Assembly: GCF_001194135.2 (NCBI RefSeq)
Contig: NC_068985.1
Coordinates: forward strand, 125,869,845-125,933,844
DNA: 64,000 nucleotides
Source of the DNA: Octopus bimaculoides
Lineage: Eukaryota
Reading direction: 5' to 3'
Shown here: in pieces, positions 1-34,213 of the stretch
Layout: every line of letters begins with the position of its first letter
Numbering within the stretch: position 1 is the stretch's first letter
Program-made: the position numbers and the translations under genes
Notes under the pieces: generated by a model
The model's input: only the letters and a program-made list of their open reading frames with translations
Database searches by the model: none
Told to the model about the DNA's origin: nothing

Positions 1-1721
1 CTTTAAGTTTTCTGTTGTGTTGAAGAAACTTGACGTAAGGAAGAGAATGTCGATATAAAAAAATAAGACAAAAAGAACACGACAATAATGAGAACAACCA
101 ACGACAAAAGAACGGGAACGGAAACAAAAAAAAAGAGACCCCCCCCCCCCCAACAGCAACAGAACATTTAAACAGTAACATTAATAACAACAAGAACAAG
201 CAGAATGAAGAACAAGGATAAAACGGATTGTAAGTAATAGCAAAATTGAAAATATAAGTGATTGAAATAAGAGTACAGAAAATAATATATTGATTATAAC
301 AAAAACGATAATAAAAAATATAATAGCAGCTGAACAATAGATGGCAGAGCAAACTTTAGATATAGCAACATGTAGCTACGTACATATATGCATACATACA
401 TTCAAGCATACATACAACAACACACACACACACAAACAAACATATATAAGCGCATACACACTTACACACACATATCATTTGATGTACAATGTACTACAAT
501 AAGAGCTAAAAAGAGTTTCAATCTCTAAGCTCATGGTTTGTTCTGTTTGAAAAATAGAACAATCCGCGTACTCAGAGCATAAAGGATTGTTTGGAGATAC
601 AAGGTACGTTATAAAAACCTACCTAACAACGTGTCTTCATGGCAAGAAACTATAAATAGTACTTATTTTAATACAATATATATTAAAACATATTTATATT
701 TCACACGTGGATGGCGTATGTGTTTGATGATTTTTAACAGAACAGTGAAACGCCTGTGTTAGAATGGGGGTAGCTGATGAAGGAAAATGTTCTCTATGTG
801 GCCTGTGTGTTTTCTGTACTCTGGTTATTATTTTTTTTTGTCTATGTTTTGATTGCAATGTCCTGTACCCAGATATGCACCTATATATACAGGTAGACGT
901 AAGTATGCACATACCTGTACGTATATATCAATATACTCATTTATTATTTGTTATATATATATATANNNNNNNNNNNNNNNNNNNNNNNNNNNNNNNNNNN
1001 NNNNNNNNNNNNNNNNNNNNNNNNNNNNNNNNNNNNNNNNNNNNNNNNNNNNNNNNNNNNNNNNNNNNNNNNNNNNNNNNNNNNNNNNNNNNNNNNNNNN
1101 NNNNNNNNNNNNNNNNNNNNNNNNNNNNNNNNNNNNNNNNNNNNNNNNNNNNNNNNNNNNNNNNNNNNNNNNNNNNNNNNNNNNNNNNNNNNNNNNNNNN
1201 NNNNNNNNNNNNNNNNNNNNNNNNNNNNNNNNNNNNNNNNNNNNNNNNNNNNNNNNNNNNNNNNNNNNNNNNNNNNNNNNNNNNNNNNNNNNNNNNNNNN
1301 NNNNNNNNNNNNNNNNNNNNNNNNNNNNNNNNNNNNNNNNNNNNNNNNNNNNNNNNNNNNNNNNNNNNNNNNNNNNNNNNNNNNNNNNNNNNNNNNNNNN
1401 NNNNNNNNNNNNNNNNNNNNNNNNNNNNNNNNNNNNNNNNNNNNNNNNNNNNNNNNNNNNNNNNNNNNNNNNNNNNNNNNNNNNNNNNNNNNNNNNNNNN
1501 NNNNNNNNNNNNNNNNNNNNNNNNNNNNNNNNNNNNNNNNNNNNNNNNNNNNNNNNNNNNNNNNNNNNNNNNNNNNNNNNNNNNNNNNNNNNNNNNNNNN
1601 NNNNNNNNNNNNNNNNNNNNNNNNNNNNNNNNNNNNNNNNNNNNNNNNNNNNNNNNNNNNNNNNNNNNNNNNNNNNNNNNNNNNNNNNNNNNNNNNNNNN
1701 NNNNNNNNNNNNNNNNNNNNN

Positions 1722-1754
<33 letters not shown>

Positions 1755-2879
1755 TACATAATGTATATTTGAATATATATGCGTGTGTGTGTGTATGTGT
1801 ATGTGAGTGCCTGCGCGCGCGCGTGTGTAATTTCATTTTTATGTTTCGAATTTCAATCATTAAACTGCAAGCAAACCATGTTACACTAGGTCACGTGAGG
1901 CTACACCAGACCACAAGGGGACACAACCATCAAATATTTTCGTTTATCTGTCGCAGTACTCTTTTAGTCAAGTAATCATTATACCGAGTACCACTTTTCC
2001 AACTGTTATGGAATGACAATGAAGGACGCAACACCTATCACAATGCCAGGTAAGCATTTAAAATCTTTCATGAACACATACACATATACACATGGTCTCA
2101 TACTCAGACTAATACATAAAATCATTTTCAAAAGGGTTTTTCAATCAAATATTTACTATTATCTATAGCTTTATATGTACTTCGAGATTCCAAAAAAGAG
2201 AGTTATTCCATGCTCTCTTGAATATTCATAAAATTCTCATTACGTCAAAAGCATATATATATATATATATATATATANNNNNNNNNNNNNNNNNNNNNNN
2301 NNNNNNNNNNNNNNNNNNNNNNNNNNNNNNNNNNNNNNNNNNNNNNNNNNNNNNNNNNNNNNNNNNNNNNNNNNNNNNNNNNNNNNNNNNNNNNNNNNNN
2401 NNNNNNNNNNNNNNNNNNNNNNNNNNNNNNNNNNNNNNNNNNNNNNNNNNNNNNNNNNNNNNNNNNNNNNNNNNNNNNNNNNNNNNNNNNNNNNNNNNNN
2501 NNNNNNNNNNNNNNNNNNNNNNNNNNNNNNNNNNNNNNNNNNNNNNNNNNNNNNNNNNNNNNNNNNNNNNNNNNNNNNNNNNNNNNNNNNNNNNNNNNNN
2601 NNNNNNNNNNNNNNNNNNNNNNNNNNNNNNNNNNNNNNNNNNNNNNNNNNNNNNATATATATATACATATATACATATATATATATAATTACCTAAATAC
2701 ATGCCTATATACATATGTACAAACACGCATACAACATATATAAATCAAGAAATTGAGAAGGGTGAGCAATGTTGCTGGAGGGTAAAACATAAAACGTTGC
2801 GTCTTTTCTTTTCCTGAAAATGGATTTTTCATGGCTTAGCAGGATTTTGGCTTTTACTGGTTTTTGTATTTTACTGTAC

Positions 2880-2999
2880 CTGGCGTGTACATCGACTACC
2901 CCACAGGCAACCTCGACACAACCCGGTGGTACAATGCCACCAAGTGCTAACCATGCTTGGTATTCAGCTGTTTTAATATCGCCTGTCTGGCGCTTCGAT
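2880..2999 (-). CDS. Cassette exon A: (R)SKR-QTGDIKTAEYQAWLALGGIVPPGCVEVACGVVDVHA, mature-peptide exon
   Basis: Acceptor ttttacctgtttacag|ATCGAAGCGC, donor GCCAG|gtacagtaaa; 120 nt, phase 2-2, open frame. Shares 18 identical residues over a 39-column hand alignment with exon B. Lies inside supplied ORF 2705..3076. Confidence 0.9.
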
Positions 3000-3600
3000 C
3001 TGTAAACAGGTAAAACAACACACAAATGGACATCAACAATAATGACAGAACAATTTGACACGTCGATAAGAAACAAACGTTATAAATACGAGAAGGAATG
3101 TGAAGGAAAAGTGCACATATCAACGAAAAAGGTAATGACAACAAAATAAAATCAATATTGCTTTTTGTAATAACATAACAATTATAATGTGACCAGCTAT
3201 ATGAAATGTGGGGTGTCATTGGATAAAGATAACTATAGAAGAGGCAATGGAGTTTTACTGGAATTGGAGGTGGTTGGTAAGGTAACACGATATTCCTTTA
3301 ACAAATGGTCAAAATATTTACTTAAATATTAATATATACATGCGCATATGTGTGTATGTGTGCGTAAAAGGGTCAAATATATACTTATACATTAATGTAT
3401 ATGTGTGTGTGCATATACTATTCATATGCATTAAATGATCTATGGAAATTGAACTCCGAGTCTGCTGTAATGTATATAGCCGTGTTAACTACAACACAAG
3501 AGTGATAACTTATTTAGCTACCTAAATCAGAAGTTTAACCAAGCCATATTAGCGGTTTATGAAGTGTGAACTTAGCCCACACAGTATGAAGGTAGAGTAC

Positions 3601-3642
<42 letters not shown>

Positions 3643-3899
3643 TGCGTGCGTGTGTATGTGTGTGGTGTGTGTGCGCGCGCAATATTTATGAATGAAATGG
3701 TACAAAAATTTGAACTGTAAAAATTGAATCTATCATTGCTACGTTGTTAATTATTGGTATAACACAAAACCCGAAAAAAATAGTAACATTGACCATTTAC
3801 TTAAGGATTTGAGGTGGGGAAGTCAGAAAGGGCTTTGGTTTAGGTCTTGACTAGGTAAAAGGATGGTGTATTTGGGGGTTGAACTAGAGCTTACTATAC

Positions 3900-4013
3900 C
3901 TCTTTTCAATATCAACTAACCCACACGCCACCTGGGTGCAGGTAATTTTTCTGGACAATGCCATCAGTGCCCGATACTCAGCCGCTCGCATATCAGCTAG
4001 CTGTCGTTTAGAT
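3900..4013 (-). CDS. Cassette exon B: (R)SKR-QLADMRAAEYRALMALSRKITCTQVACGLVDIEK, mature-peptide exon
   Basis: Acceptor cccctgcttacag|ATCTAAACGA, donor AAGAG|gtatagtaag; 114 nt, phase 2-2, open frame. Furin motif, N-terminal Gln, two Cys in C-x4-C; clear paralog of exon 2880-2999. Lies inside supplied ORF 3884..4066. Confidence 0.9.
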
Positions 4014-6767
4014 CTGTAAGCAGGGGTTGTAGAAATGCATGCATTACATAAGATGTTCTGTTGCATATTCTCTTGATATCATACATAGCATGAACACTTT
4101 TCAAAAATGTAATCCATACACCGAAATATATTTTTATGCCACAGCAAAACTGAATCCATTACTTTTCATATAACTTAAAGTGAAATTTTTATAGTTGCTA
4201 AACCTGGACCACTGCATAAATTAGCTTAACAGTCTGTGAGTTAAGTAGCATTTTCTACTTAGCAAATGGATACCATTTACTTAATTCATCAGCCCTGTTC
4301 TCCGTGCTAGTCAGTTAAGCAGACGCTGACGAGGGTGAGAGAGCTTGAAGCTCGTCTTGTTTCCTTGTCCGTGTTTGTTGATCGTTTGGTTGTATACACT
4401 CAAGGCTTATTCTGCACCTGATCCCAACATAATTTCAGCAAAACACATGACTGGAACTCTTAAAAGTATTTTAAAACGTTTTAACTATAATTACCCTTCG
4501 TGATACCAACTTCTTTCAAAATATGTTCAAATTTATACAAATCATGTGTGCTATAAATAGAGCAATTTGACTGAACACACTCTTTATTTTTTGTTTTGTC
4601 ACATACCCAGTTAGTTTTTCATTTGTCGTTAAAATCCGTATTGATCCATACATACTAACGATTTTTTTCTTTTTCTCTCGATACCTGAAATAGTTTTCGC
4701 TATTTAATTTCCAATAATAAGCTCTGATTCTTTCATTAACTAGCATTTCAAATTATTACATCTATATGTATGCATTCAAAGTATCTTAAAGTCGATAAGT
4801 TTCATTTCTGAGTTCTCTTAAGTTCAAATCTCATTGAGATCTACTTTGATTTTGTTCCTGATAAAATAAGTACATGTCAAACATTGCAGTAGATTAAATC
4901 AACACTGATACCATAAACCGTATGGCTTTAAGTTACAGTTGTTGGCAATTAGCCATTTACTGCCTCCCTAGTACTTAAGTTTACAACGCAGGCAAAACTC
5001 CATATAAATTTATGTTCGATTAGAAACTCGTATTTTACCTATACGATATGCATTGTATATGAGGCTTAAACATTTATTTTATCCCTCGGTTTGTAAACAT
5101 ACGTACATTCGCACATACATACATACATACATACACGCACATGTGTATATGTACATAAGTTTATATATCTGTATATATGTATGTATGTCTAGTAAGTTTG
5201 CTTTCTAATCACACTTCTCCTGTGTCTCAGGTACATTCAATCCTTTCGAAATTCCATAAACAGAAACTGTGTAGAAGCCGTCGGATGAACTGTATTTTTA
5301 AGGAGTGAACTTAATCCAACGACCGACTTGATTGGTTTTTCACTTTGTTGTATGCATTCGGCTTGCATTCACTAATGTCTAACAAAAAGGGCATGAACAT
5401 TGCTATTTCTCTTACGTAGACGTAACAAAATGTGAGCGGCTGATACGATACAATTATATGTATAATGTAAAAAAGTGAATTATTACAGGTATCTTTAAAG
5501 GGCTAATGATTTTGTTCACGGCCCGTATAAATAATGAGCTTCCCAGAGTGCCTACCAACAGAATAGCTTGCAAAAGTCAGTTAAACAAGCAGTAGTAGGT
5601 CGATCTGTAAGGAAAATACCTGTTTCACTTACGCTTACTCGACTTCGTGGGACGAGAGAGAGAAAGAGAAAGAGAGAGAGGAAGGGAGAGAGAGACGATG
5701 GGAAGACAGTGGCTTTCCCTCTACCGTACGTAATATTCCTAAATCTATGATCTATTTTGAGTTGCCTGGAACCTTTACTGAAAACGAGCACATGATAGTA
5801 TATGGTAGTCCATAGTCAAATGTATCCTTCATTGTACATGAAGATTCGGAGTCATACTTTTTAACACTGTTAAGCGAATTTGACCTGACCGGGTGCTCTG
5901 TCAGACTTGAAACTCATGATCGAGAGCCTACTTGCCTGATTTACAAAACCAAGTGTAATCAAATAAAATCAGTGGTATTGCAGTCCAAATACTCAATAGA
6001 AGGATGGTATTCGAACTGAACAAACAGACGATAAATGTGTGTGGGGGGGAGGCGCTTTGTAATTCCAATTCTACATATATACAATTATTAGTACTTTCTT
6101 CGTTTTTGAGAATTATTCTCCTTTAAGCTTTCCTGTAATTTCCGTTATGCAACACACAGTAAAAGCAGCATGTGTTTTAATGCCAGCGCAGAGATAATGC
6201 ATGGAAACCGTGAGGTGTCGGCATTCTCAGCCAATTGTAACATATACTATAGCCGACTTATACGTCATCTTCCTATGTGATAAATCAAGTGAGTTATTAA
6301 ATGTACGCAATTTCTGCTGGACTATGAATTAGCAGCTGTAATATTTAATCAATAAACAGTTATTTCTATTCCTAAGCATCGCAACATTCTTCAAGAGTCT
6401 AAGCACGGAGAATGTAAATTCATCTTCAGGTTATATTTTTTATTTAATATATTTAAATACCCCACTTATTACTCTAACAATGTTTGGCTAATTAAAACCA
6501 TAAAGATCTCAAAAAATTGCATCACTATGATCGATTTTGTCTGGATTGTATGAACTAGGATAAGCTCCAGATTTGATGCAGTGGCATTTATACTTTTAGT
6601 CATTCATAGCTGCATCGTATCATTGTAAGTAAATTTGAGTTTCCTGTTGTTTCTGTATCCTTTTATTGTTACTTAATTATGTTTATCAGCTAATTAAGTA
6701 CCATTGGAAAATATCAATACACAAGTGACAAAGAAAGTAAAATCTTCTTTCCAAATACAAAATCTTA

Positions 6768-6809
<42 letters not shown>

Positions 6810-7207
6810 TAAGATTTTGTATTTNNNNNNNNNNNNNNNNNNNNNNNNNNNNNNNNNNNNNNNNNNNNNNNNNNNNNNNNNNNNNNNNNNNNNNNNNNNN
6901 NNNNNNNNNNNNNNNNNNNNNNNNNNNNNNNNNNNNNNNNNNNNNNNNNNNNNNNNNNNNNNNNNNNNNNNNNNNNNNNNNNNNNNNNNNNNNNNNNNNN
7001 NNNNNNNNNNNNNNNNNNNNNNNNNNNNNNNNNNNNNNNNNNNNNNNNNNNNNNNNNNNNNNNNNNNNNNNNNNNNNNNNNNNNNNNNNNNNNNNNNNNN
7101 NNNNNNNNNNNNNNNNNNNNNNNNNNNNNNNNNNNNNNNNNNNNNNNNNNNNNNNNNNNNNNNNNNNNNNNNNNNNNNNNNNNNNNNNNNNNNNACATAT
7201 GTGTATG

Positions 7208-7254
<47 letters not shown>

Positions 7255-7501
7255 ATCTATATATTATGTGTATGTATATGTGTGTATGTATGTATGCATG
7301 TATGCATATATTATTGTGTCTGGAGAGAGTCATTCTCTTTTAGCGCTCTATTATTAAAATCTTCGTTCCGACCTGCCACCTTTTCAATAGTCATTGAGTG
7401 CGTTAAATAATGTCACCAAATGAGAATGACTCTCTTCAGACACACAACACACGAATTTACATAATGAATCTTGCAAGCCAAATCCAGAACGAAACACAGA
7501 C

Positions 7502-7557
<56 letters not shown>

Positions 7558-7560
7558 ACA

Positions 7561-8134
7561 TACAGGTGCAGTGAATAAAGTGTCGTCTAAATTTCGCAAA
7601 ATATAATAGATGTACTTATCAAAATTACATTAAAATATCTTGAAATACAAAAGAGTAAATTATTTCAATAAAATCGCCATTGACTTCAACCAGGGCCTCC
7701 AGACAACTTCGGAATCTCCTGCAACTCTTTTGGACAGTCTCGGCCTCTTTATTTAAGTTGGCGAATGCTGCCACAAGCCCTCAGTTCATCTTTGGTATTA
7801 AAAGGAGTTTTGTTGGTCTCTCGCTCAACTGCGTCCTACACATAATAATCAAGGGGGTTGCAGTCCGGGGAGTTAGGTGGCCAGATGTAAGGATGGTGTG
7901 GCCGCAGAAATTGTCGTACAACCATGACTGGGTTCTCCTACTTGTATGGCATAGTGTAGATTCCTGCTGCCAGACATAGGTTCTTCCATTAGCCACCCTC
8001 TTCATCCAGGTCAGCACACCTCCTCCAGGTACTTGATGTAGGCCTCCATGCTGAACCTGAGGCCGTGTGAGAAGATGAAAGATGCATAACGTCGTCATCA
8101 CTAGTATTCACTCCAAACACCATGATGTTGACGG
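7561..8134 (-). mobile_element. Tc1/mariner superfamily, maT (DD37D)-like transposon 3' fragment
   Basis: Frameshifted translation VNIMVFGV..., VWQQESTLCHTSRRTQSWLYDNFCGH..., DCNPLDYYV. The end tacaggtgcagtgaataaagtgtcgtctaaatt matches the reverse complement of the right end of the copy at 47108. Confidence 0.85.
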
Positions 8135-9140
8135 TGTACTCACTGCAAGCTATGGATACATGAGTGCAATGGAATCGCAAGAAGGTTTACCGAGAAAGAA
8201 GTCTTTGTGTGTGGCAGGTGTAAAATAAATAAATGCGCCCTTTTAAAGCCTAACCAGGCTCATGGACCCGGTTTCCCGGTTTCTATGGCGTATGGGTTCC
8301 CCAGCTGGACGGGACGCCAGTCCATCGCAGCGTTACTCATTTTTGCCAGCTGAGTGGACTGGAGCAACGTGAAATGAAGTGTTTTGCTCAAGAACACAAC
8401 GCGTCGCCAGGTCCAGGAATCGAAACCACAATCTTATGATCATGATGCTGACACCCTAACCACTAAGCCATGCGCCTCTACGTGTGGCAGGTGTGCAGGA
8501 AAAATAAAAACTGAGAGCATACAGTAAATGGATTCCTACCAACACTCAGGTTATCCTTAGAGGTGGTGGGTAGTTTCCGCTACCTAAGTTTTCAAATCTC
8601 AAGTGAGAGGGGATACTCTGAAAGTGTAGTTGCTTCAATTACAACCAGCTGGACAAAGTTCAGAGAGCTATTACCTTTTTTGTTAACAAAGAACCTCTCT
8701 CCGTCTCTCTGAGTGAAAGACATATTGTATGATATTTGAGCACGAACTGCTATGCTGTATCATAGTGAAACGTAGGCTGTGACTGCAGAGAACATGCAAA
8801 GAATTGACATAAATGAAGACAGTAAGCTCCGCTGTATGTGTAATGTCATTGTGCATGTAAGACAGAATGTAAATATGTTGAGATAAGAAATGGATATGAG
8901 GCATCAGATGTAGTGTGCAAGGCAGAAGACATGTGATGCGTCTAGATGAAAAAAACCTGCACAAAGCAATGCAGACCTTTAAATGTGGATGGAACTTGTG
9001 GAAGAGGGAAAGATGAGAGACGAAGTGTTGAAAATCGATCTTCAACTGTGCCTCGCAGAGGAAATGACAAAGGAGCGAGATGCTAAGTGATTTGTTGTGA
9101 TTGAGAAGATTCATCTATCTAAGCTAAGTAAAGTCGGTAC
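8135..9140 (+). mobile_element. RTE-clade LINE 3' fragment (decayed), interrupted by a SINE
   Basis: Broken translation CTHCKLWIH...EKEVFVCGRC, LEVVGSFRYL, WTKFRELLPFL, AMLYHSET*AVT, HVMRLDE, typical of the RTE RT C-terminal region; many stops. Confidence 0.8.
8222..8481 (-). mobile_element. tRNA-derived SINE with 13-bp target-site duplication
   Basis: Minus-strand head ggcgcatggcttagtggttagg...ggtttcgattcc (A and B boxes). TSD gtgtggcaggtgt at 8209-8221 and 8482-8494. Confidence 0.9.
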
Positions 9141-9509
9141 CATAAAGGCATGTTGTTTATGTCCATGCACCTACACACAGTCTTCCCTGACTGCTTCTAG
9201 CACCTCCCTCATTTCCCACCCACCGCCTGATGTATTTTCCTCCCCTATATCTTCCACTCTCGTTTCGCTCCCAGGCGGATCTAAGCCCTTTCAATGTGTC
9301 CCTGTTGAATCTTTTCCCAATAATATATCTTCCTAACGCATTCTCCCTCTATTTATGTCCACTCACTTCATTCCTTCGACATTCTACCTACTTTTGAAAA
9401 TTTACCTACCCATTTACCTCATCCAATCTTTGGCCCCACTTCACTTATATACACCTCTGTGTAATTTGAGTATTCCCCTTTGACTATCTTCTCCCCTTCT
9501 CTCTTCATT

Positions 9510-9545
<36 letters not shown>

Positions 9546-9599
9546 TCTCTCTCTCATCTCTCGCTCTCTATCCTCTCTTTCTTCTATCACTGTCCAACT

Positions 9600-9850
9600 G
9601 AGGTAGACATGCTTTTTTACTGCAAGACACTTATTTCTGTCCATCTGTACTCTAATCACTCTTCATCTAGCCCAAAGTCATCTGCCCCAATACTAATCTC
9701 CGCCTCAAGTTGAGGAGCCTTGTCTTGTAAGTTATTTGGTCTCCTCGCTGCTGTTAGTGCCACACAAAACGCACACAGTTCATTCTGTAAAGTGATTGGT
9801 GTTAGGAAGTGTAGCCAACCATGGAAGCTATGCCCAAGCAGACGGTCGAG
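9600..9850 (+). repeat. Non-coding interspersed repeat fragment (probably RTE/SINE-associated)
   Basis: gccttgtcttgtaagt...gtgccacacaaaacgcacacagttcattctgtaaagtgattggtgttaggaag resembles a common octopod repeat (recognition only). Confidence 0.4.
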
Positions 9851-10836
9851 CTTTGCTCAGTTTTCTGGTTTTAAATCACTTTTATTTATTCACAGCCATC
9901 TTTTTTCTCTACCTGTCTTATCTTCAACATCCCTATGAAATTGTGCATACATTTTTTCTTTGCCTATCTATTTTCGGATTCAATCGTTTTCAATTTCTAG
10001 TACAGTACTTAATCTTTGAAATCTTTCATCCTACACAAGCCTGACCTCTTACTTCTAATAATAGCGGTTCTGTGGCATTTTTACATACTATTATATGTTG
10101 TTTTCTTCTGCTATAATGCTGTGTTCGCATCCAATAAGTCCTCTTCCTCCTCTTTTTCTTGGTACATACAGTCTGTCTGTGTCACTTTTTGGGTAGAGTG
10201 TCCCATATCTAGTTAGCAACTTCTTTGTCTTTCTGTCTAAGCTGTTTAGTTCGTTTACTGTCCATGCGATTACCCCTGCTCCATATATAAGGAGTGAAAC
10301 CGCCCAGGTGTTGATAGCTTCAATCTTATTCCGTCCGTTTAATTTCGACTTAAGAATCAGTCTCAGTTTGCGCAAGTATTCCACCTGACTAACACACCAC
10401 ACTTTCTCTGTCCGAACTCCATTCTAATGTCAGCACTAAAAGTATACACCGTATCAACGAGGGAACTGACTTGTGCTTCATCTTTACCATAATGTTTGAG
10501 ATCATCTATGAATAACAAAAGGTTGACTTTTTGTTGACGGCTTTTGAATACACACCCAACTTTTGCTTTGCTCAGCATCAGTGTTAGTGGTATCAAGCAC
10601 AGTACAAAGATCAGTGAGGACAGGCAGTCCTCTTGGAAGATACCCCGCCTGATTTCCACTGTCCCTAAACTTCTTCCGTATGCTCTTAGGGCCGTCCTCA
10701 AATTCGCCATACTTTTTCCAAGTAATCGCTCAACATTCCATTATCCAAGAGTATGGGATCATATGCTTTACGATAGTCGGTTCATGACATGGCTAAGTTA
10801 CTTTTCCTCCTCTTGCAGTCTCTAAGTACAATAAAA
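9850..10836 (-). mobile_element. R4/Dong-like non-LTR retrotransposon fragment 1 (RT region, decayed)
   Basis: ORFs 10363..10710 and 10091..10402: GIFQEDCLSSLIFVLCLIPL, LLFIDDLKHY, MEFGQRKCG, KLRLILKSKLNGRNKIEAINTWAV, LYPKSDTDRLYVPRKRGGRGL. The 5' end abuts a (TAA)n array. Confidence 0.85.

Positions 10837-10900
<64 letters not shown>
10837..10900. repeat. (TAT/ATA)n trinucleotide array
   Basis: Direct reading. Confidence 0.97.
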
Positions 10901-11454
10901 GAGTGAGAAAGCAGTGCATGACATCAAACTGACACTGGGGTACAAATACATGAAGCCCATTATACCCATCATGACTACCCGTCTGATTAGGGTGCACCAG
11001 GCACATGCATCACCATCATATGTGCGTGACATCGTGATCTCATATCAAGATAAACAGCGCAGAATCTTGCAGGTGAAGTCCAGTTACAATGTTTTTCGGG
11101 TTGAGTAGCCTATCCCGCTCAAAAGATCCCTGAATAAGGTTCGTTTGAGGATGATGAACAAAACACCCATGTATCCAGAGGTGTATTATTCAAACCCCAA
11201 AGAATTCCTCTCAGCACATGGCTATGATGCTCCCCCACTACTTCTGCTTGTGATCAGAAATGCATATATTGTCAGCCACCAAGGGACATGCTCAACTGGT
11301 TAAGGTCAAACAACTGACAAGCAAATCTGTGGTATTAAGCAGAATATTTGTTGTAGCTCATCTTTCATACCAAGACAAAATGATGTACATGATAACACTT
11401 GCAATCAGTGAAGATCAAAAGCCATGAGAGCCACTGCCTGGTGTTGCACCAGGG

Positions 11455-11455
<1 letters not shown>
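10901..11455. mobile_element. 555-bp non-coding interspersed element bounded on both sides by (TAT)n
   Basis: Complex sequence sharply bounded by TAT arrays; no tRNA boxes, no TIRs, no credible ORF; perfect 7-bp hairpin cctggtg-ttg-caccagg at the right end. Confidence 0.6.
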
Positions 11456-11517
<62 letters not shown>

Positions 11518-11545
11518 TATTATTATAATTATTATGTTGTTGTTG
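11456..11545. repeat. (TAT)n array grading into (GTT)n
   Basis: Direct reading. Confidence 0.95.
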
Positions 11546-13866
<2,321 letters not shown>

Positions 13867-33492: not shown

Positions 33493-34213
33493 NNNNNNNN
33501 NNNNNNNNNNNNNNNNNNNNNNNNNNNNNNNNNNNNNNNNNNNNNNNNNNNNNNNNNNNNNNNNNNNNNNNNNNNNNNNNNNNNNNNNNNNNNNNNNNNN
33601 NNNNNNNNNNNNNNNNNNNNNNNNNNNNNNNNNNNNNNNNNNNNNNNNNNNNNNNNNNNNNNNNNNNNNNNNNNNNNNNNNNNNNNNNNNNNNNNNNNNN
33701 NNNNNNNNNNNNNNNNNNNNNNNNNNNNNNNNNNNNNNNNNNNNNNNNNNNNNNNNNNNNNNNNNNNNNNNNNNNNNNNNNNNNNNNNNNNNNNNNNNNN
33801 NNNNNNNNNNNNNNNNNNNNNNNNNNNNNNNNNNNNNNNNNNNNNNNNNNNNNNNNNNNNNNNNNNNNNNNNNNNNNNNNNNNNNNNNNNNNNNNNNNNN
33901 NNNNNNNNNNNNNNNNNNNNNNNNNNNNNNNNNNNNNNNNNNNNNNNNNNNNNNNNNNNNNNNNNNNNNNNNNNNNNNNNNNNNNNNNNNNNNNNNNNNN
34001 NNNNNNNNNNNNNNNNNNNNNNNNNNNNNNNNNNNNNNNNNNNNNNNNNNNNATATATATATATATACATATTCCTGAACGATCTTTGTCGAATAAATCG
34101 ACACACAACATATTTTTCCTTTAAGCCTAACATACATTTTATCTTTCTCTTTTGCTGAACCGCTCAGTTACAGAGACGTAAACACAACAAAACCGGTTTT
34201 CAACCGGTGAAGC

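What the first reader, a model, noticed from the sequence alone, without database searches (positions are those of the whole stretch)
2880..4013. Peptides resemble invertebrate PTH-like (iPTH/PXXXamide) hormones but carry a disulfide ring and lack the Pro
From memory, arthropod PTH-like peptides are 35-40 aa, follow an RxKR site, start with a D-x-R-x-AE-x-x-x-L-x-AL helix and end G-x-G-x-VDPxxx-amide. Both cassettes match the helix, the length and the G-x-VD tail, but have VAC-G in a C-x4-C ring and VD-V/I in place of VD-P. They may be a cyclised molluscan paralog (an S-amide type if the next exon supplies Ser-Gly) and candidate ligands for orphan class B (secretin/PTH-receptor-like) GPCRs. 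The family call is recall-based inference.
Basis: partly seen in the sequence, partly recalled or inferred. Interest (0 to 1): 0.7.

Follow-up and report, generated by a model that had tools for sequence, protein, structure and literature searches.

The report
Known octopus QSamide (PTH-like) peptide exons

Summary
On the minus strand, 4013..3900 (cassette A) and 2999..2880 (cassette B) are two phase-2/phase-2 exons with conserved splice signals. They encode QLADMRAAEYRALMALSRKITCTQVACGLVDIEK(S) and QTGDIKTAEYQAWLALGGIVPPGCVEVACGVVDVHA(S).

The window is 100% identical to O. bimaculoides chromosome CM046605.1. Both peptides appear verbatim as "Octopus bimaculoides transcript 1/2" in Table S1 of Xie et al. 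2020, the iPTH paper. Cassette B is also in RefSeq LOC106873782.

The gene has a signal-peptide exon (window 14266..14178), cassettes A and B, a third canonical PXXXamide/iPTH-type cassette, and a last exon. The last two lie 4.2 and 15.8 kb beyond the window.

A QSamide HMM built without cephalopods scores 47-59 bits on the cassettes. A profile-profile comparison of QSamide and iPTH/PXXXamide peptides gives P = 2e-7.

The family (QSamide/QSGamide) and its alternative splicing with PXXXamide exons are already described in oyster, Lottia, annelids and brachiopods. Only the receptor pairing is still untested in lophotrochozoans. Verdict: interpretation supported, already known, low interest.

The parts
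14178..14266 (-). Coding part of exon 1: MTRHILILSIVGMVLVSLVNARYIPEEEL plus the split-codon bases AG. By inspection this is a signal peptide plus a short spacer. The donor is AG|GTAAGT. The ATG is directly preceded by TTTCAG.
   Evidence: tblastn with the published precursor N-terminus. Sequence, ATG and donor were read directly. It is identical to exon 1 of RefSeq LOC106873782, P0003.
3900..4013 (-). Cassette A, 114 nt, phase 2/2. It encodes (R)SKR | QLADMRAAEYRALMALSRKITCTQVACGLVDIEK plus AG. When spliced to the last exon it gives a 35-aa peptide that starts with Gln, has a CTQVAC ring and ends ...EKS-GKKKR (Ser-amide).
   Evidence: It equals 'O. bimaculoides transcript 1' in PMC7224569 Table S1. 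It is present in O. sinensis RefSeq models P0001/P0002. The QSamide HMM scores it at 47.4 bits. It is 97.4% identical to O. sinensis, against 83-93% for the flanking introns.
2880..2999 (-). Cassette B, 120 nt, phase 2/2. It encodes (R)SKR | QTGDIKTAEYQAWLALGGIVPPGCVEVACGVVDVHA plus AG. When spliced to the last exon it gives a 37-aa peptide with a CVEVAC ring that ends ...HAS-GKKKR (Ser-amide). When spliced to cassette 3 it ends ...HAS-VKR, with no amidation signal.
   Evidence: It equals 'transcript 2' in PMC7224569 Table S1. It is in RefSeq O. bimaculoides LOC106873782 (P0003) and an O. vulgaris model (P0004). The QSamide HMM scores it at 58.7 bits. It is 100% identical in DNA to O. sinensis, 76% identical to the Sepia transcript-2 peptide and 66% to Aplysia QSamide.
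3000..3899 (-). Intron between cassettes A and B. It contains microsatellites and shows no coding signal.
   Evidence: It is 82.8% identical to O. sinensis, with many indels.
4014..14177 (-). Intron 1, about 10.2 kb. It carries decayed reverse-transcriptase fragments and two assembly gaps.
   Evidence: Exon mapping. Pfam RVT_1 hits at 13021-13734 and 10363-10710.
1..2879 (-). Start of the intron downstream of cassette B. The gene runs off the window here. Cassette 3 (the PXXXamide/iPTH type, VKRTSSDQRIAELKALLAMSRVVGHGQIDVDA+I) and the last exon (GKKKRSDISSDDIRRSILAQKLIQFAAERLAKTE*) lie 4.2 kb and 15.8 kb beyond window position 1.
   Evidence: No match to either exon in the window. Both were found in the chromosome-level locus L001, at 22468-22566 and 34066-34171. 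The window is 100% identical to L001, with window position p equal to L001 position 18267-p.

Best explanation
The region holds two of the three alternatively spliced peptide cassettes of the single-copy Octopus bimaculoides QSamide/PXXXamide (invertebrate PTH-like, iPTH) prohormone gene, RefSeq LOC106873782.

Shown here:
- The gene is made of a signal-peptide exon, cassette A, cassette B, cassette 3 and a common C-terminal exon.
- All three cassettes are phase-2/phase-2 and a multiple of 3 nt long, so any subset splices in frame.
- The split codon at each junction sets the processing sites. AG|A gives Arg, which completes R-SKR ahead of a QS-type cassette. AG|T gives Ser followed by Gly-KKKR when a QS cassette joins the last exon.

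Inferred from standard prohormone processing:
- The signal peptide is removed.
- A furin/PC-type convertase cleaves after RSKR and within GKKKR.
- Carboxypeptidase trims the basic residues and PAM converts the C-terminal Gly into an amide.
- The N-terminal Gln may cyclise to pyroglutamate, and the two Cys form a C-x4-C disulfide ring.
- The products would be 35-aa and 37-aa peptides with an N-terminal amphipathic helix (D-x-R/K-x-AEY-x-A-x-x-AL), a C-terminal ring, and ...G-h-VD-h-x-x-Ser-NH2.

Splice choice therefore decides whether the cell secretes a cyclic S-amide peptide (A or B), the linear iPTH-type peptide (cassette 3), or a non-amidated QS-like peptide together with the linear one, as in the RefSeq isoform B+3.

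The most likely target is a PTH-receptor-type class B GPCR. That is inferred from the Tribolium iPTH/iPTHR pairing and from orthology, and I put it at about 0.55. It has not been shown for any QS-type peptide.
For: - Exact sequence identity with the published transcripts 1 and 2 (PMC7224569 Table S1).
- Database gene models in three Octopus species carry the cassettes in several combinations: A+last, A+3+last, B+last, B+3+last, and A+B+3 in a paralogous model.
- The window is 100% identical to CM046605.1, and the full exon map with canonical AG/GT sites and a common phase was read from L001.
- The same five-exon layout exists in O. sinensis.
- The cassette exons are 97.4% and 100% identical between the two species, against 83-93% for the flanking introns. 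That is 3 differences in 234 exon positions, against roughly 6.5% substitutions in introns.
- A QSamide HMM built without cephalopods gives E 1.8e-13 and 5e-17, with 0 of 1000 shuffles reaching the score.
- Links to iPTH/PXXXamide: HMM E 1.6e-4 for cassette A; hhalign 93.5% probability, P 2.4e-7.
- The oyster QSamide3/PXXXamide gene shows the same alternative-exon design, and the paper reports all the mature oyster QSamide/PXXXamide peptides except Cragi-QSamide2 detected by mass spectrometry (PMC8398477).
- Thiel et al. 2021 equate QSGamide with iPTH orthologs.
Against: - Splicing is supported only by published or RefSeq transcript models.
- Cassette B alone is not significant against iPTH profiles (E 0.7-1.1).
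- The AlphaFold model of the precursor is low-confidence (pLDDT 52). It supports only helix propensity over the N-terminal half of the peptide and says nothing about the ring.
- Pfam has no model that matches.
- The receptor pairing is untested in any lophotrochozoan. No later deorphanisation was found in the held library.
Confidence: 0.95

Rival explanations
1. The cassettes are genuine QS-type peptides, but they signal through a receptor other than the PTHR-type class B GPCR. Examples would be a different class B cluster or a rhodopsin-type receptor. Alternatively they modulate or antagonise the receptor of the linear cassette-3 peptide rather than activating it.
For: The C-terminal half differs strongly from iPTH: a disulfide ring replaces the G-h-G/AHG segment, there is no Pro, and the end is Ser-amide. 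Cassette B does not significantly match iPTH profiles. The pairing is explicitly described as assumed and unproven (PMC8557429). Xie et al. raise the possibility of further PTH-receptor ligands only for Tribolium.
Against: The peptides share one gene with the canonical iPTH-type exon, with the same exon phase. The conserved N-terminal D-x-R-x-AE-x-x-x-L-x-AL helix is the most conserved part of iPTH. The profile-profile alignment runs end to end. The authors of PMC8557429 consider the pairing likely.
Confidence: 0.3
2. The cassettes are remnants or exons of a glycine N-methyltransferase-like (class I SAM methyltransferase) gene. Cassette B resembles the GNMT segment RTAEYKAWL...GC...DVACGTG that leads into SAM-binding motif I.
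For: phmmer of cassette B against PDB sequences lists only GNMT chains, E 0.4-0.9.
Against: The E-values are not significant, and cassette A has no such hit. The GxGxG motif is absent: VACGVVDV against VACGTGVDS. No other GNMT-like exon exists in the window. The exons are spliced into a 102-137 aa secretory precursor with dibasic sites.
Confidence: 0.01
3. The cassettes are non-functional duplicated pseudo-exons, or gene-model artefacts, that are not translated into secreted peptides. Only the canonical cassette 3 would be used.
For: No octopus expression or peptide data were examined here. One UniRef model (P0006) skips all cassettes.
Against: The reading frames are open, and the splice sites and phases are intact in both O. 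bimaculoides and O. sinensis. The exons are much more conserved than the introns, and cassette B is 100% identical at DNA level. Cassette B is 76% identical to the Sepia peptide across a deep cephalopod split. Orthologous QSamides were detected by mass spectrometry in oyster.
Confidence: 0.03

Closest known systems
QSamide / QSGamide neuropeptides (first described in Platynereis dumerilii; also Lottia, Aplysia, Crassostrea, Patinopecten, Lingula, Phoronis; 'Samide' in Sepia officinalis)
   Same: A dibasic site followed by Gln. An N-terminal helix of the form x-A/G-D-x-K/R-x-x-E-Y/L. A Pro/Gly-rich linker. The motif G-C-x-x-h-A/G-C-G-h-h-D-h-x-x-S-G-basic. A length of 35-38 aa. Cassette B is 76% identical to the Sepia peptide and 66% to Aplysia QSamide. 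The HMM built without cephalopods scores 47-59 bits.
   Different: Nothing essential differs; these are members of the family. Cassette A is a more divergent second copy, seen here only in Octopus species. Its best non-octopus identity is about 50-53%, and it has a 2-residue shorter linker.
PXXXamide / insect parathyroid hormone (iPTH; Sepia officinalis PXXXamide, Tribolium castaneum iPTH; Xie et al. 2020)
   Same: The same gene, since cassette 3 is the canonical type. The same exon phase. The same D-x-R-x-AE-x-x-x-L-x-AL N-terminal helix, the same G-x-VD motif near the C-terminus, and the same Gly + basic amidation signal. HMM E 1.6e-4 for cassette A; profile-profile P 2.4e-7.
   Different: The QS type has a C-x4-C ring where iPTH has ...V-A-H/Y-G or G-F-G. 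It has no Pro at position -4, ends in Ser-amide, and starts with Gln rather than S/T-S-D. Only iPTH has a demonstrated receptor: Tc-iPTHR1 with EC50 63 nM and Tc-iPTHR2 with EC50 413 nM.
Crassostrea gigas QSamide3/PXXXamide gene (Réalis-Doyelle et al. 2021, PMC8398477)
   Same: One gene with tandem peptide-coding exons. These are differentially spliced to give transcripts encoding a QSamide, a PXXXamide, or a QS-like peptide plus a PXXXamide. The order is QS-type exon(s) upstream of PXXX-type exon(s).
   Different: Octopus has two QS-type cassettes and one PXXX-type cassette in the gene. Oyster has one QS-type and two PXXX-type cassettes in the corresponding gene, plus separate QSamide1/2 genes.
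Vertebrate PTH / PTHrP / TIP39
   Same: Proposed functional analogy only. These are helical peptides of about 34-40 aa that are ligands of PTHR-type class B GPCRs.
   Different: There is no detectable sequence homology. Xie et al. report below 12% identity between iPTH and human PTH, PTHrP and TIP39. Vertebrate PTH has no disulfide ring and is not amidated (my own knowledge). Pfam gives no hit for the octopus precursors.

Membership tests
QSamide/QSGamide neuropeptide family | Significant match to a family profile built without the query lineage | tested here: met
   The HMM was built from 9 non-cephalopod published peptides with cleavage sites trimmed. Cassette A scores 47.4 bits (E 1.8e-13) and cassette B 58.7 bits (E 5e-17). 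None of 1000 shuffles reached these scores. They are the only two hits in the window's six-frame translation.
QSamide/QSGamide neuropeptide family | Two Cys spaced C-x4-C, followed by G-h-h-D | tested here: met
   CTQVACGLVDI in A and CVEVACGVVDV in B. The same columns are invariant in the family alignment. Disulfide formation itself was not tested.
QSamide/QSGamide neuropeptide family | C-terminal Ser followed by Gly + basic residues (Ser-amide) | tested here: met
   The cassette ends in AG and the last exon starts T GGC AAG AAA AAA CGT, giving S-G-K-K-K-R. This was read from L001, because the last exon lies outside the window. It agrees with the published transcripts and with models P0002/P0004.
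QSamide/QSGamide neuropeptide family | Secretory precursor: N-terminal signal peptide and a dibasic or furin-type site directly before the peptide | tested here: met
   Exon 1 encodes MTRHILILSIVGMVLVSLVNA|RY..., with a hydrophobic core judged by inspection; no signal-peptide predictor was available. R-S-K-R|Q is formed across the exon 1/cassette junction.
QSamide/QSGamide neuropeptide family | Mature, amidated, disulfide-bonded peptide present in tissue | not testable with these tools
   This needs peptidomics. Oyster orthologs are reported as detected by mass spectrometry (PMC8398477).
PXXXamide / iPTH family | Encoded by the iPTH/PXXXamide prohormone gene (shared signal peptide and C-terminal exon) | tested here: met
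   The same gene holds the canonical cassette TSSDQRIAELKALLAMSRVVGHGQIDVDAI-GKKKR. That cassette scores 48 bits on the PXXXamide HMM and 30 bits on the arthropod-only HMM.
PXXXamide / iPTH family | Significant sequence match to an iPTH/PXXXamide profile | tested here: inconclusive
   Cassette A: 18.7 bits, E 1.6e-4 on the full profile, and E 0.003 on the arthropod-only profile. Cassette B: 7.1 bits, E 0.7, and E 1.1 on the arthropod-only profile. Family-level profile-profile comparison: 93.5% probability, P 2.4e-7.
PXXXamide / iPTH family | Pro at position -4 from the amidated C-terminus (the name-giving feature) | tested here: not met
   ...VDIEKS and ...VDVHAS have no Pro. Xie et al. note that this Pro is only mildly conserved. 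The octopus canonical cassette also lacks it (IDVDAI).
PXXXamide / iPTH family | Conserved N-terminal S-D (SDQRLAEL) motif | tested here: inconclusive
   A has L-A-D-M-R-A-AE-Y and B has T-G-D-I-K-T-AE-Y. The Asp and the AE are kept, but the Ser is replaced by Ala or Gly.
PXXXamide / iPTH family | Activates a PTHR-type class B GPCR | not testable with these tools
   This is shown only for Tribolium iPTH. It is stated as unproven for lophotrochozoan QSGamides.
Glycine N-methyltransferase / class I SAM methyltransferase | SAM-binding motif I (h-h-D/E-h-G-x-G-x-G) and the rest of the Rossmann-fold exons | tested here: not met
   VACGVVDV lacks the GxG. There are no further GNMT-like exons in the window. 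The E-values are 0.4-0.9.

The most novel reading that the evidence does not exclude
Splice choice in this one gene may switch the animal between pharmacologically distinct hormones. The cyclic Ser-amide peptides (A, B) and the linear iPTH-type peptide (cassette 3) would be selective for different class B receptor paralogs, or would act as an agonist/antagonist pair on the same PTHR-type receptor. The octopod-restricted cassette A would then be a recently evolved third ligand. Nothing here excludes this, and no QS-type peptide has yet been paired with a receptor in the literature I could search.
Probability: 0.25. Interest if true: 0.5.

Novelty: already known. Interest (0 to 1): 0.12.

Why it matters
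As a discovery it adds nothing. The octopus isoforms, the QSamide family, its orthology to iPTH/PXXXamide and the alternative-exon architecture are all in print (PMC7224569 Table S1, PMC8398477, PMC8557429).

Its residual value is threefold:
- It is a clean, base-exact annotation of a gene that public gene models represent inconsistently. One UniRef model skips all cassettes, and the RefSeq model has only B+3.
- It illustrates how a split codon at the splice junction creates both the furin site (AG|A = Arg) and the amidated Ser (AG|T = Ser-Gly).
- It points to an open experimental question: whether QS-type cyclic peptides activate lophotrochozoan PTH-receptor orthologs.

Tried and rejected
- PDB sequence search and Pfam scan with the bare 38-40 aa cassettes gave nothing for A. 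For B they gave only non-significant GNMT hits. I followed the GNMT lead with a tblastn probe and rejected it: no other exons, and no GxGxG motif.
- The search for homologous proteins with cassette B alone returned 'no candidate', although a database protein (P0003) contains it verbatim. This is a sensitivity limit of the word index for short queries. The full-length isoform query worked.
- A search of the window for cassette 3 and the last exon found neither. Both lie outside the window, as shown in L001.
- Pfam on the full precursors gave no family, so the UniRef label 'CRF domain-containing' for P0006 was not reproduced.
- AlphaFold2 on the precursor with a 5-sequence alignment gave pLDDT 52 and pTM 0.22, so the ring region is uninterpretable. 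I did not run a fold search because the model is too poor.
- Literature searches for a later receptor deorphanisation of QSamide/QSGamide, or for an octopus-specific study, found nothing beyond the 2020-2021 papers.
- I did not use the single large profile search (search of protein representatives), because the identity was already settled.

Full report
**1. What is in the sequence**

The window is eukaryotic: 35% GC, 27 assembly gaps and abundant microsatellites. The finding's two "cassettes" are on the minus strand.

Read as exons, cassette A is 4013..3900 (114 nt) and cassette B is 2999..2880 (120 nt).

Both exons are preceded by CCTGYTTACAG| and followed by |GTAYAGTAA. Both start with the third base of a split codon and end with the first two bases (AG) of another.

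A DNA alignment of the two copies with 120-nt flanks shows similarity only across the exon and the splice signals. tblastn finds no further copy in the 64 kb. The two copies are about 50% identical as protein (E 2e-10).

The peptides are:
- (R)SKR|QLADMRAAEYRALMALSRKITCTQVACGLVDIEK
- (R)SKR|QTGDIKTAEYQAWLALGGIVPPGCVEVACGVVDVHA

**2. A false lead**

A search of PDB sequences with cassette B returned only glycine N-methyltransferase chains, with RTAEYKAWL...GC...DVACGT aligned at E 0.4-0.9. This raised the possibility of methyltransferase exons.

Four observations rule it out:
- Cassette A gave nothing.
- Pfam gave nothing.
- A GNMT probe found no other exon in the window.
- The SAM-binding GxGxG motif is missing.

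I treat this resemblance as chance.

**3. Identification**

The literature search for "PXXXamide" led to Xie et al. 2020 (PMC7224569). Its Table S1 lists three O. bimaculoides iPTH transcripts.

- Transcript 1 contains cassette A verbatim.
- Transcript 2 contains cassette B verbatim.
- Both are preceded by MTRHIL...ARYIPEEEL and followed by SGKKKRSDISSDDIRRSILAQKLIQFAAERLAKTE.
- Transcript 3 carries a canonical PXXXamide/iPTH-type peptide instead.

The protein database gave independent confirmation. A query made of exon 1, cassette A and the published C-terminus returned the following:

| Hit | Source | Composition |
|---|---|---|
| P0003 | RefSeq O. bimaculoides LOC106873782 | exon 1 + B + cassette 3 + last exon |
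| P0001 | O. sinensis | A + 3 |
| P0002 | O. sinensis | A only |
| P0004 | O. vulgaris | B only |
| P0005 | O. vulgaris, second model | A + B + 3 in tandem |
| P0006 | UniRef | all cassettes skipped |

**4. Gene structure**

The locus of P0003 (L001, from CM046605.1 of GCA_001194135.2) is 100% identical to the window. Window position p equals L001 position 18267-p.

| Exon | L001 coordinates | Window coordinates |
|---|---|---|
| Exon 1 (coding part) | 4001-4089 | 14266..14178 |
| Cassette A | 14254-14367 | 4013..3900 |
| Cassette B | 15268-15387 | 2999..2880 |
| Cassette 3 (99 nt) | 22468-22566 | 4.2 kb beyond the window edge |
| Last exon | 34066-34171 | 15.8 kb beyond the window edge |

All junctions are canonical AG/GT. 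All three cassettes are phase 2/2 and multiples of three in length, so every combination translates in frame.

The junction codons do real work:
- Exon 1 or a QS cassette ends in AG.
- AG|A gives Arg, which completes R-SKR before a QS cassette.
- AG|C gives Ser before cassette 3.
- AG|T gives Ser before GKKKR of the last exon.

If a QS cassette is instead spliced to cassette 3, as in the RefSeq isoform, it ends ...AS-VKR without a Gly, so it would not be amidated.

**5. Family tests**

I built HMMs from the published sequences and scored the window's six-frame translation.

The QS-type profile without cephalopods picked out only the two cassettes. With cleavage sites trimmed:

| Profile | Cassette A | Cassette B |
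|---|---|---|
| QS-type, no cephalopods | 47.4 bits, E 1.8e-13 | 58.7 bits, E 5e-17 |
| iPTH/PXXXamide | 18.7 bits, E 1.6e-4 | 7.1 bits, E 0.7 |
| iPTH, arthropods only | E 0.003 | E 1.1 |

None of 1000 shuffles reached the QS-type scores.

Profile-profile comparison of QS-type against PXXXamide-type peptides gives 93.5% probability (P 2.4e-7) over the full length. QS-type against arthropod iPTH gives 64% (P 6.7e-5). The alignment puts aCG-VD-(I/V) on a(H/Y)G-VD-P.

Cassette B is the ortholog of the Sepia transcript-2 peptide (76% identity) and is close to Aplysia QSamide (66%). Cassette A is a divergent second copy, found here only in Octopus species.

**6. Constraint**

O. sinensis has the same five-exon layout.

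Between the two species, cassette A is 97.4% identical and cassette B 100% identical at DNA level. The adjacent introns are 83-93% identical. That is 3 differences in 234 exon positions, against roughly 6.5% substitutions plus many indels in the introns. This pattern is consistent with purifying selection on both cassettes.

**7. What is already known**

- The oyster paper (PMC8398477) describes QSamide and PXXXamide as related families. It describes a QSamide3/PXXXamide gene whose differential splicing yields either peptide type, and it reports most of the mature peptides as detected by mass spectrometry.
- Thiel et al. 2021 (PMC8557429) state that the lophotrochozoan iPTH/PXXXamide orthologs of Xie et al. 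had been published earlier as QSGamides. [quoted passage not shown]
- De Oliveira et al. 2019 mention the Sepia "Samide" and "PXXXamide" families.
- I found no later deorphanisation or octopus-specific study in the held library.

**8. Mechanism**

Shown here: the exon architecture, the in-frame modularity, the processing motifs, family membership and cross-species constraint.

Inferred from general prohormone biology:
- Signal-peptide removal.
- Convertase cleavage at RSKR and GKKKR.
- Carboxypeptidase and PAM action giving Ser-NH2.
- Possible pyroglutamate at the N-terminus.
- A Cys-Cys ring.

Inferred from orthology only: signalling through a PTHR-type class B GPCR.

The AlphaFold model (pLDDT 52) supports no more than helix propensity across EEEL...RALMALS.

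**9. Verdict**

The cassettes are alternative exons rather than a paralogous gene. The cyclic type is lophotrochozoan-wide rather than molluscan. It already has names: QSamide, QSGamide or Samide.

Novelty: already known. Interest is low. The only open point is the receptor pharmacology of the cyclic versus the linear products.

Noticed in passing
window 13021-13734 (-) and 10363-10710 (-): Intron 1 of the gene contains decayed reverse-transcriptase ORF fragments. They match Pfam RVT_1 at E 1.2e-10 and 1.9e-4, so they are remnants of non-LTR or other retroelements in the same orientation as the gene.
   Followed up: partly
window 14267-14275 (-), directly upstream of the ATG at 14266: The start codon of exon 1 is immediately preceded by a good splice-acceptor-like sequence (TTTGATTTCAG|ATG). 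The gene therefore probably has an upstream non-coding 5'UTR exon, which may lie further into the window above 14.3 kb.
   Followed up: no
window 2880-2999 (-), cassette B: There is a chance resemblance to glycine N-methyltransferase: TAEYQAWL..GC..VACG against RTAEYKAWL..GC..DVACGTG, E 0.4 against PDB. It could mislead automated annotation of the isolated exon.
   Followed up: yes
P0006 (UniRef, O. bimaculoides, 64 aa = exon 1 + last exon): One public gene model skips all three peptide cassettes and is named 'Corticotropin-releasing factor domain-containing protein'. Pfam gives no hit for it here. The conserved C-terminal exon (…DIRRSILAQKLIQFAAERLAKTE) might itself be a helical peptide worth a look.
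   Followed up: partly
P0005 (O. vulgaris) and P0002 (O. sinensis LOC118761766, on a 48 kb contig): O. vulgaris has a second, diverged model with A-, B- and PXXX-type cassettes read in tandem (…VDIDK-RSKR-QTGDVK…INAS-GKR-TSSDQRIAEL…) and a different C-terminus. O. sinensis has a second locus on a small contig. These may be paralogs or haplotigs; this was not resolved.
   Followed up: no
PMC7224569 Table S1 versus window 14266-14178 and L001 22468-22566: The published octopus sequences, as held in text form, differ from the genome by two missing residues: MTRHILISIV against MTRHILILSIV, and RIAEKALL against RIAELKALL. These are probably transcription or PDF-extraction errors rather than polymorphism.
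   Followed up: partly
PMC7224569 Table S1, Zootermopsis nevadensis transcript 2: A termite iPTH gene also has an alternative exon encoding a Gln-initiated, two-Cys peptide: RDKR-QTDVFVKQYITQLNRRQAVTIIVPCAGLNTTSCG-RRRR. This hints that a cyclic alternative cassette may predate the lophotrochozoan/ecdysozoan split.
   Followed up: no
tool behaviour: The word-indexed protein search returned no candidate for the 40-aa cassette B, even though database protein P0003 contains it exactly. Negative results with short peptide queries in that tool should not be read as absence.
   Followed up: yes
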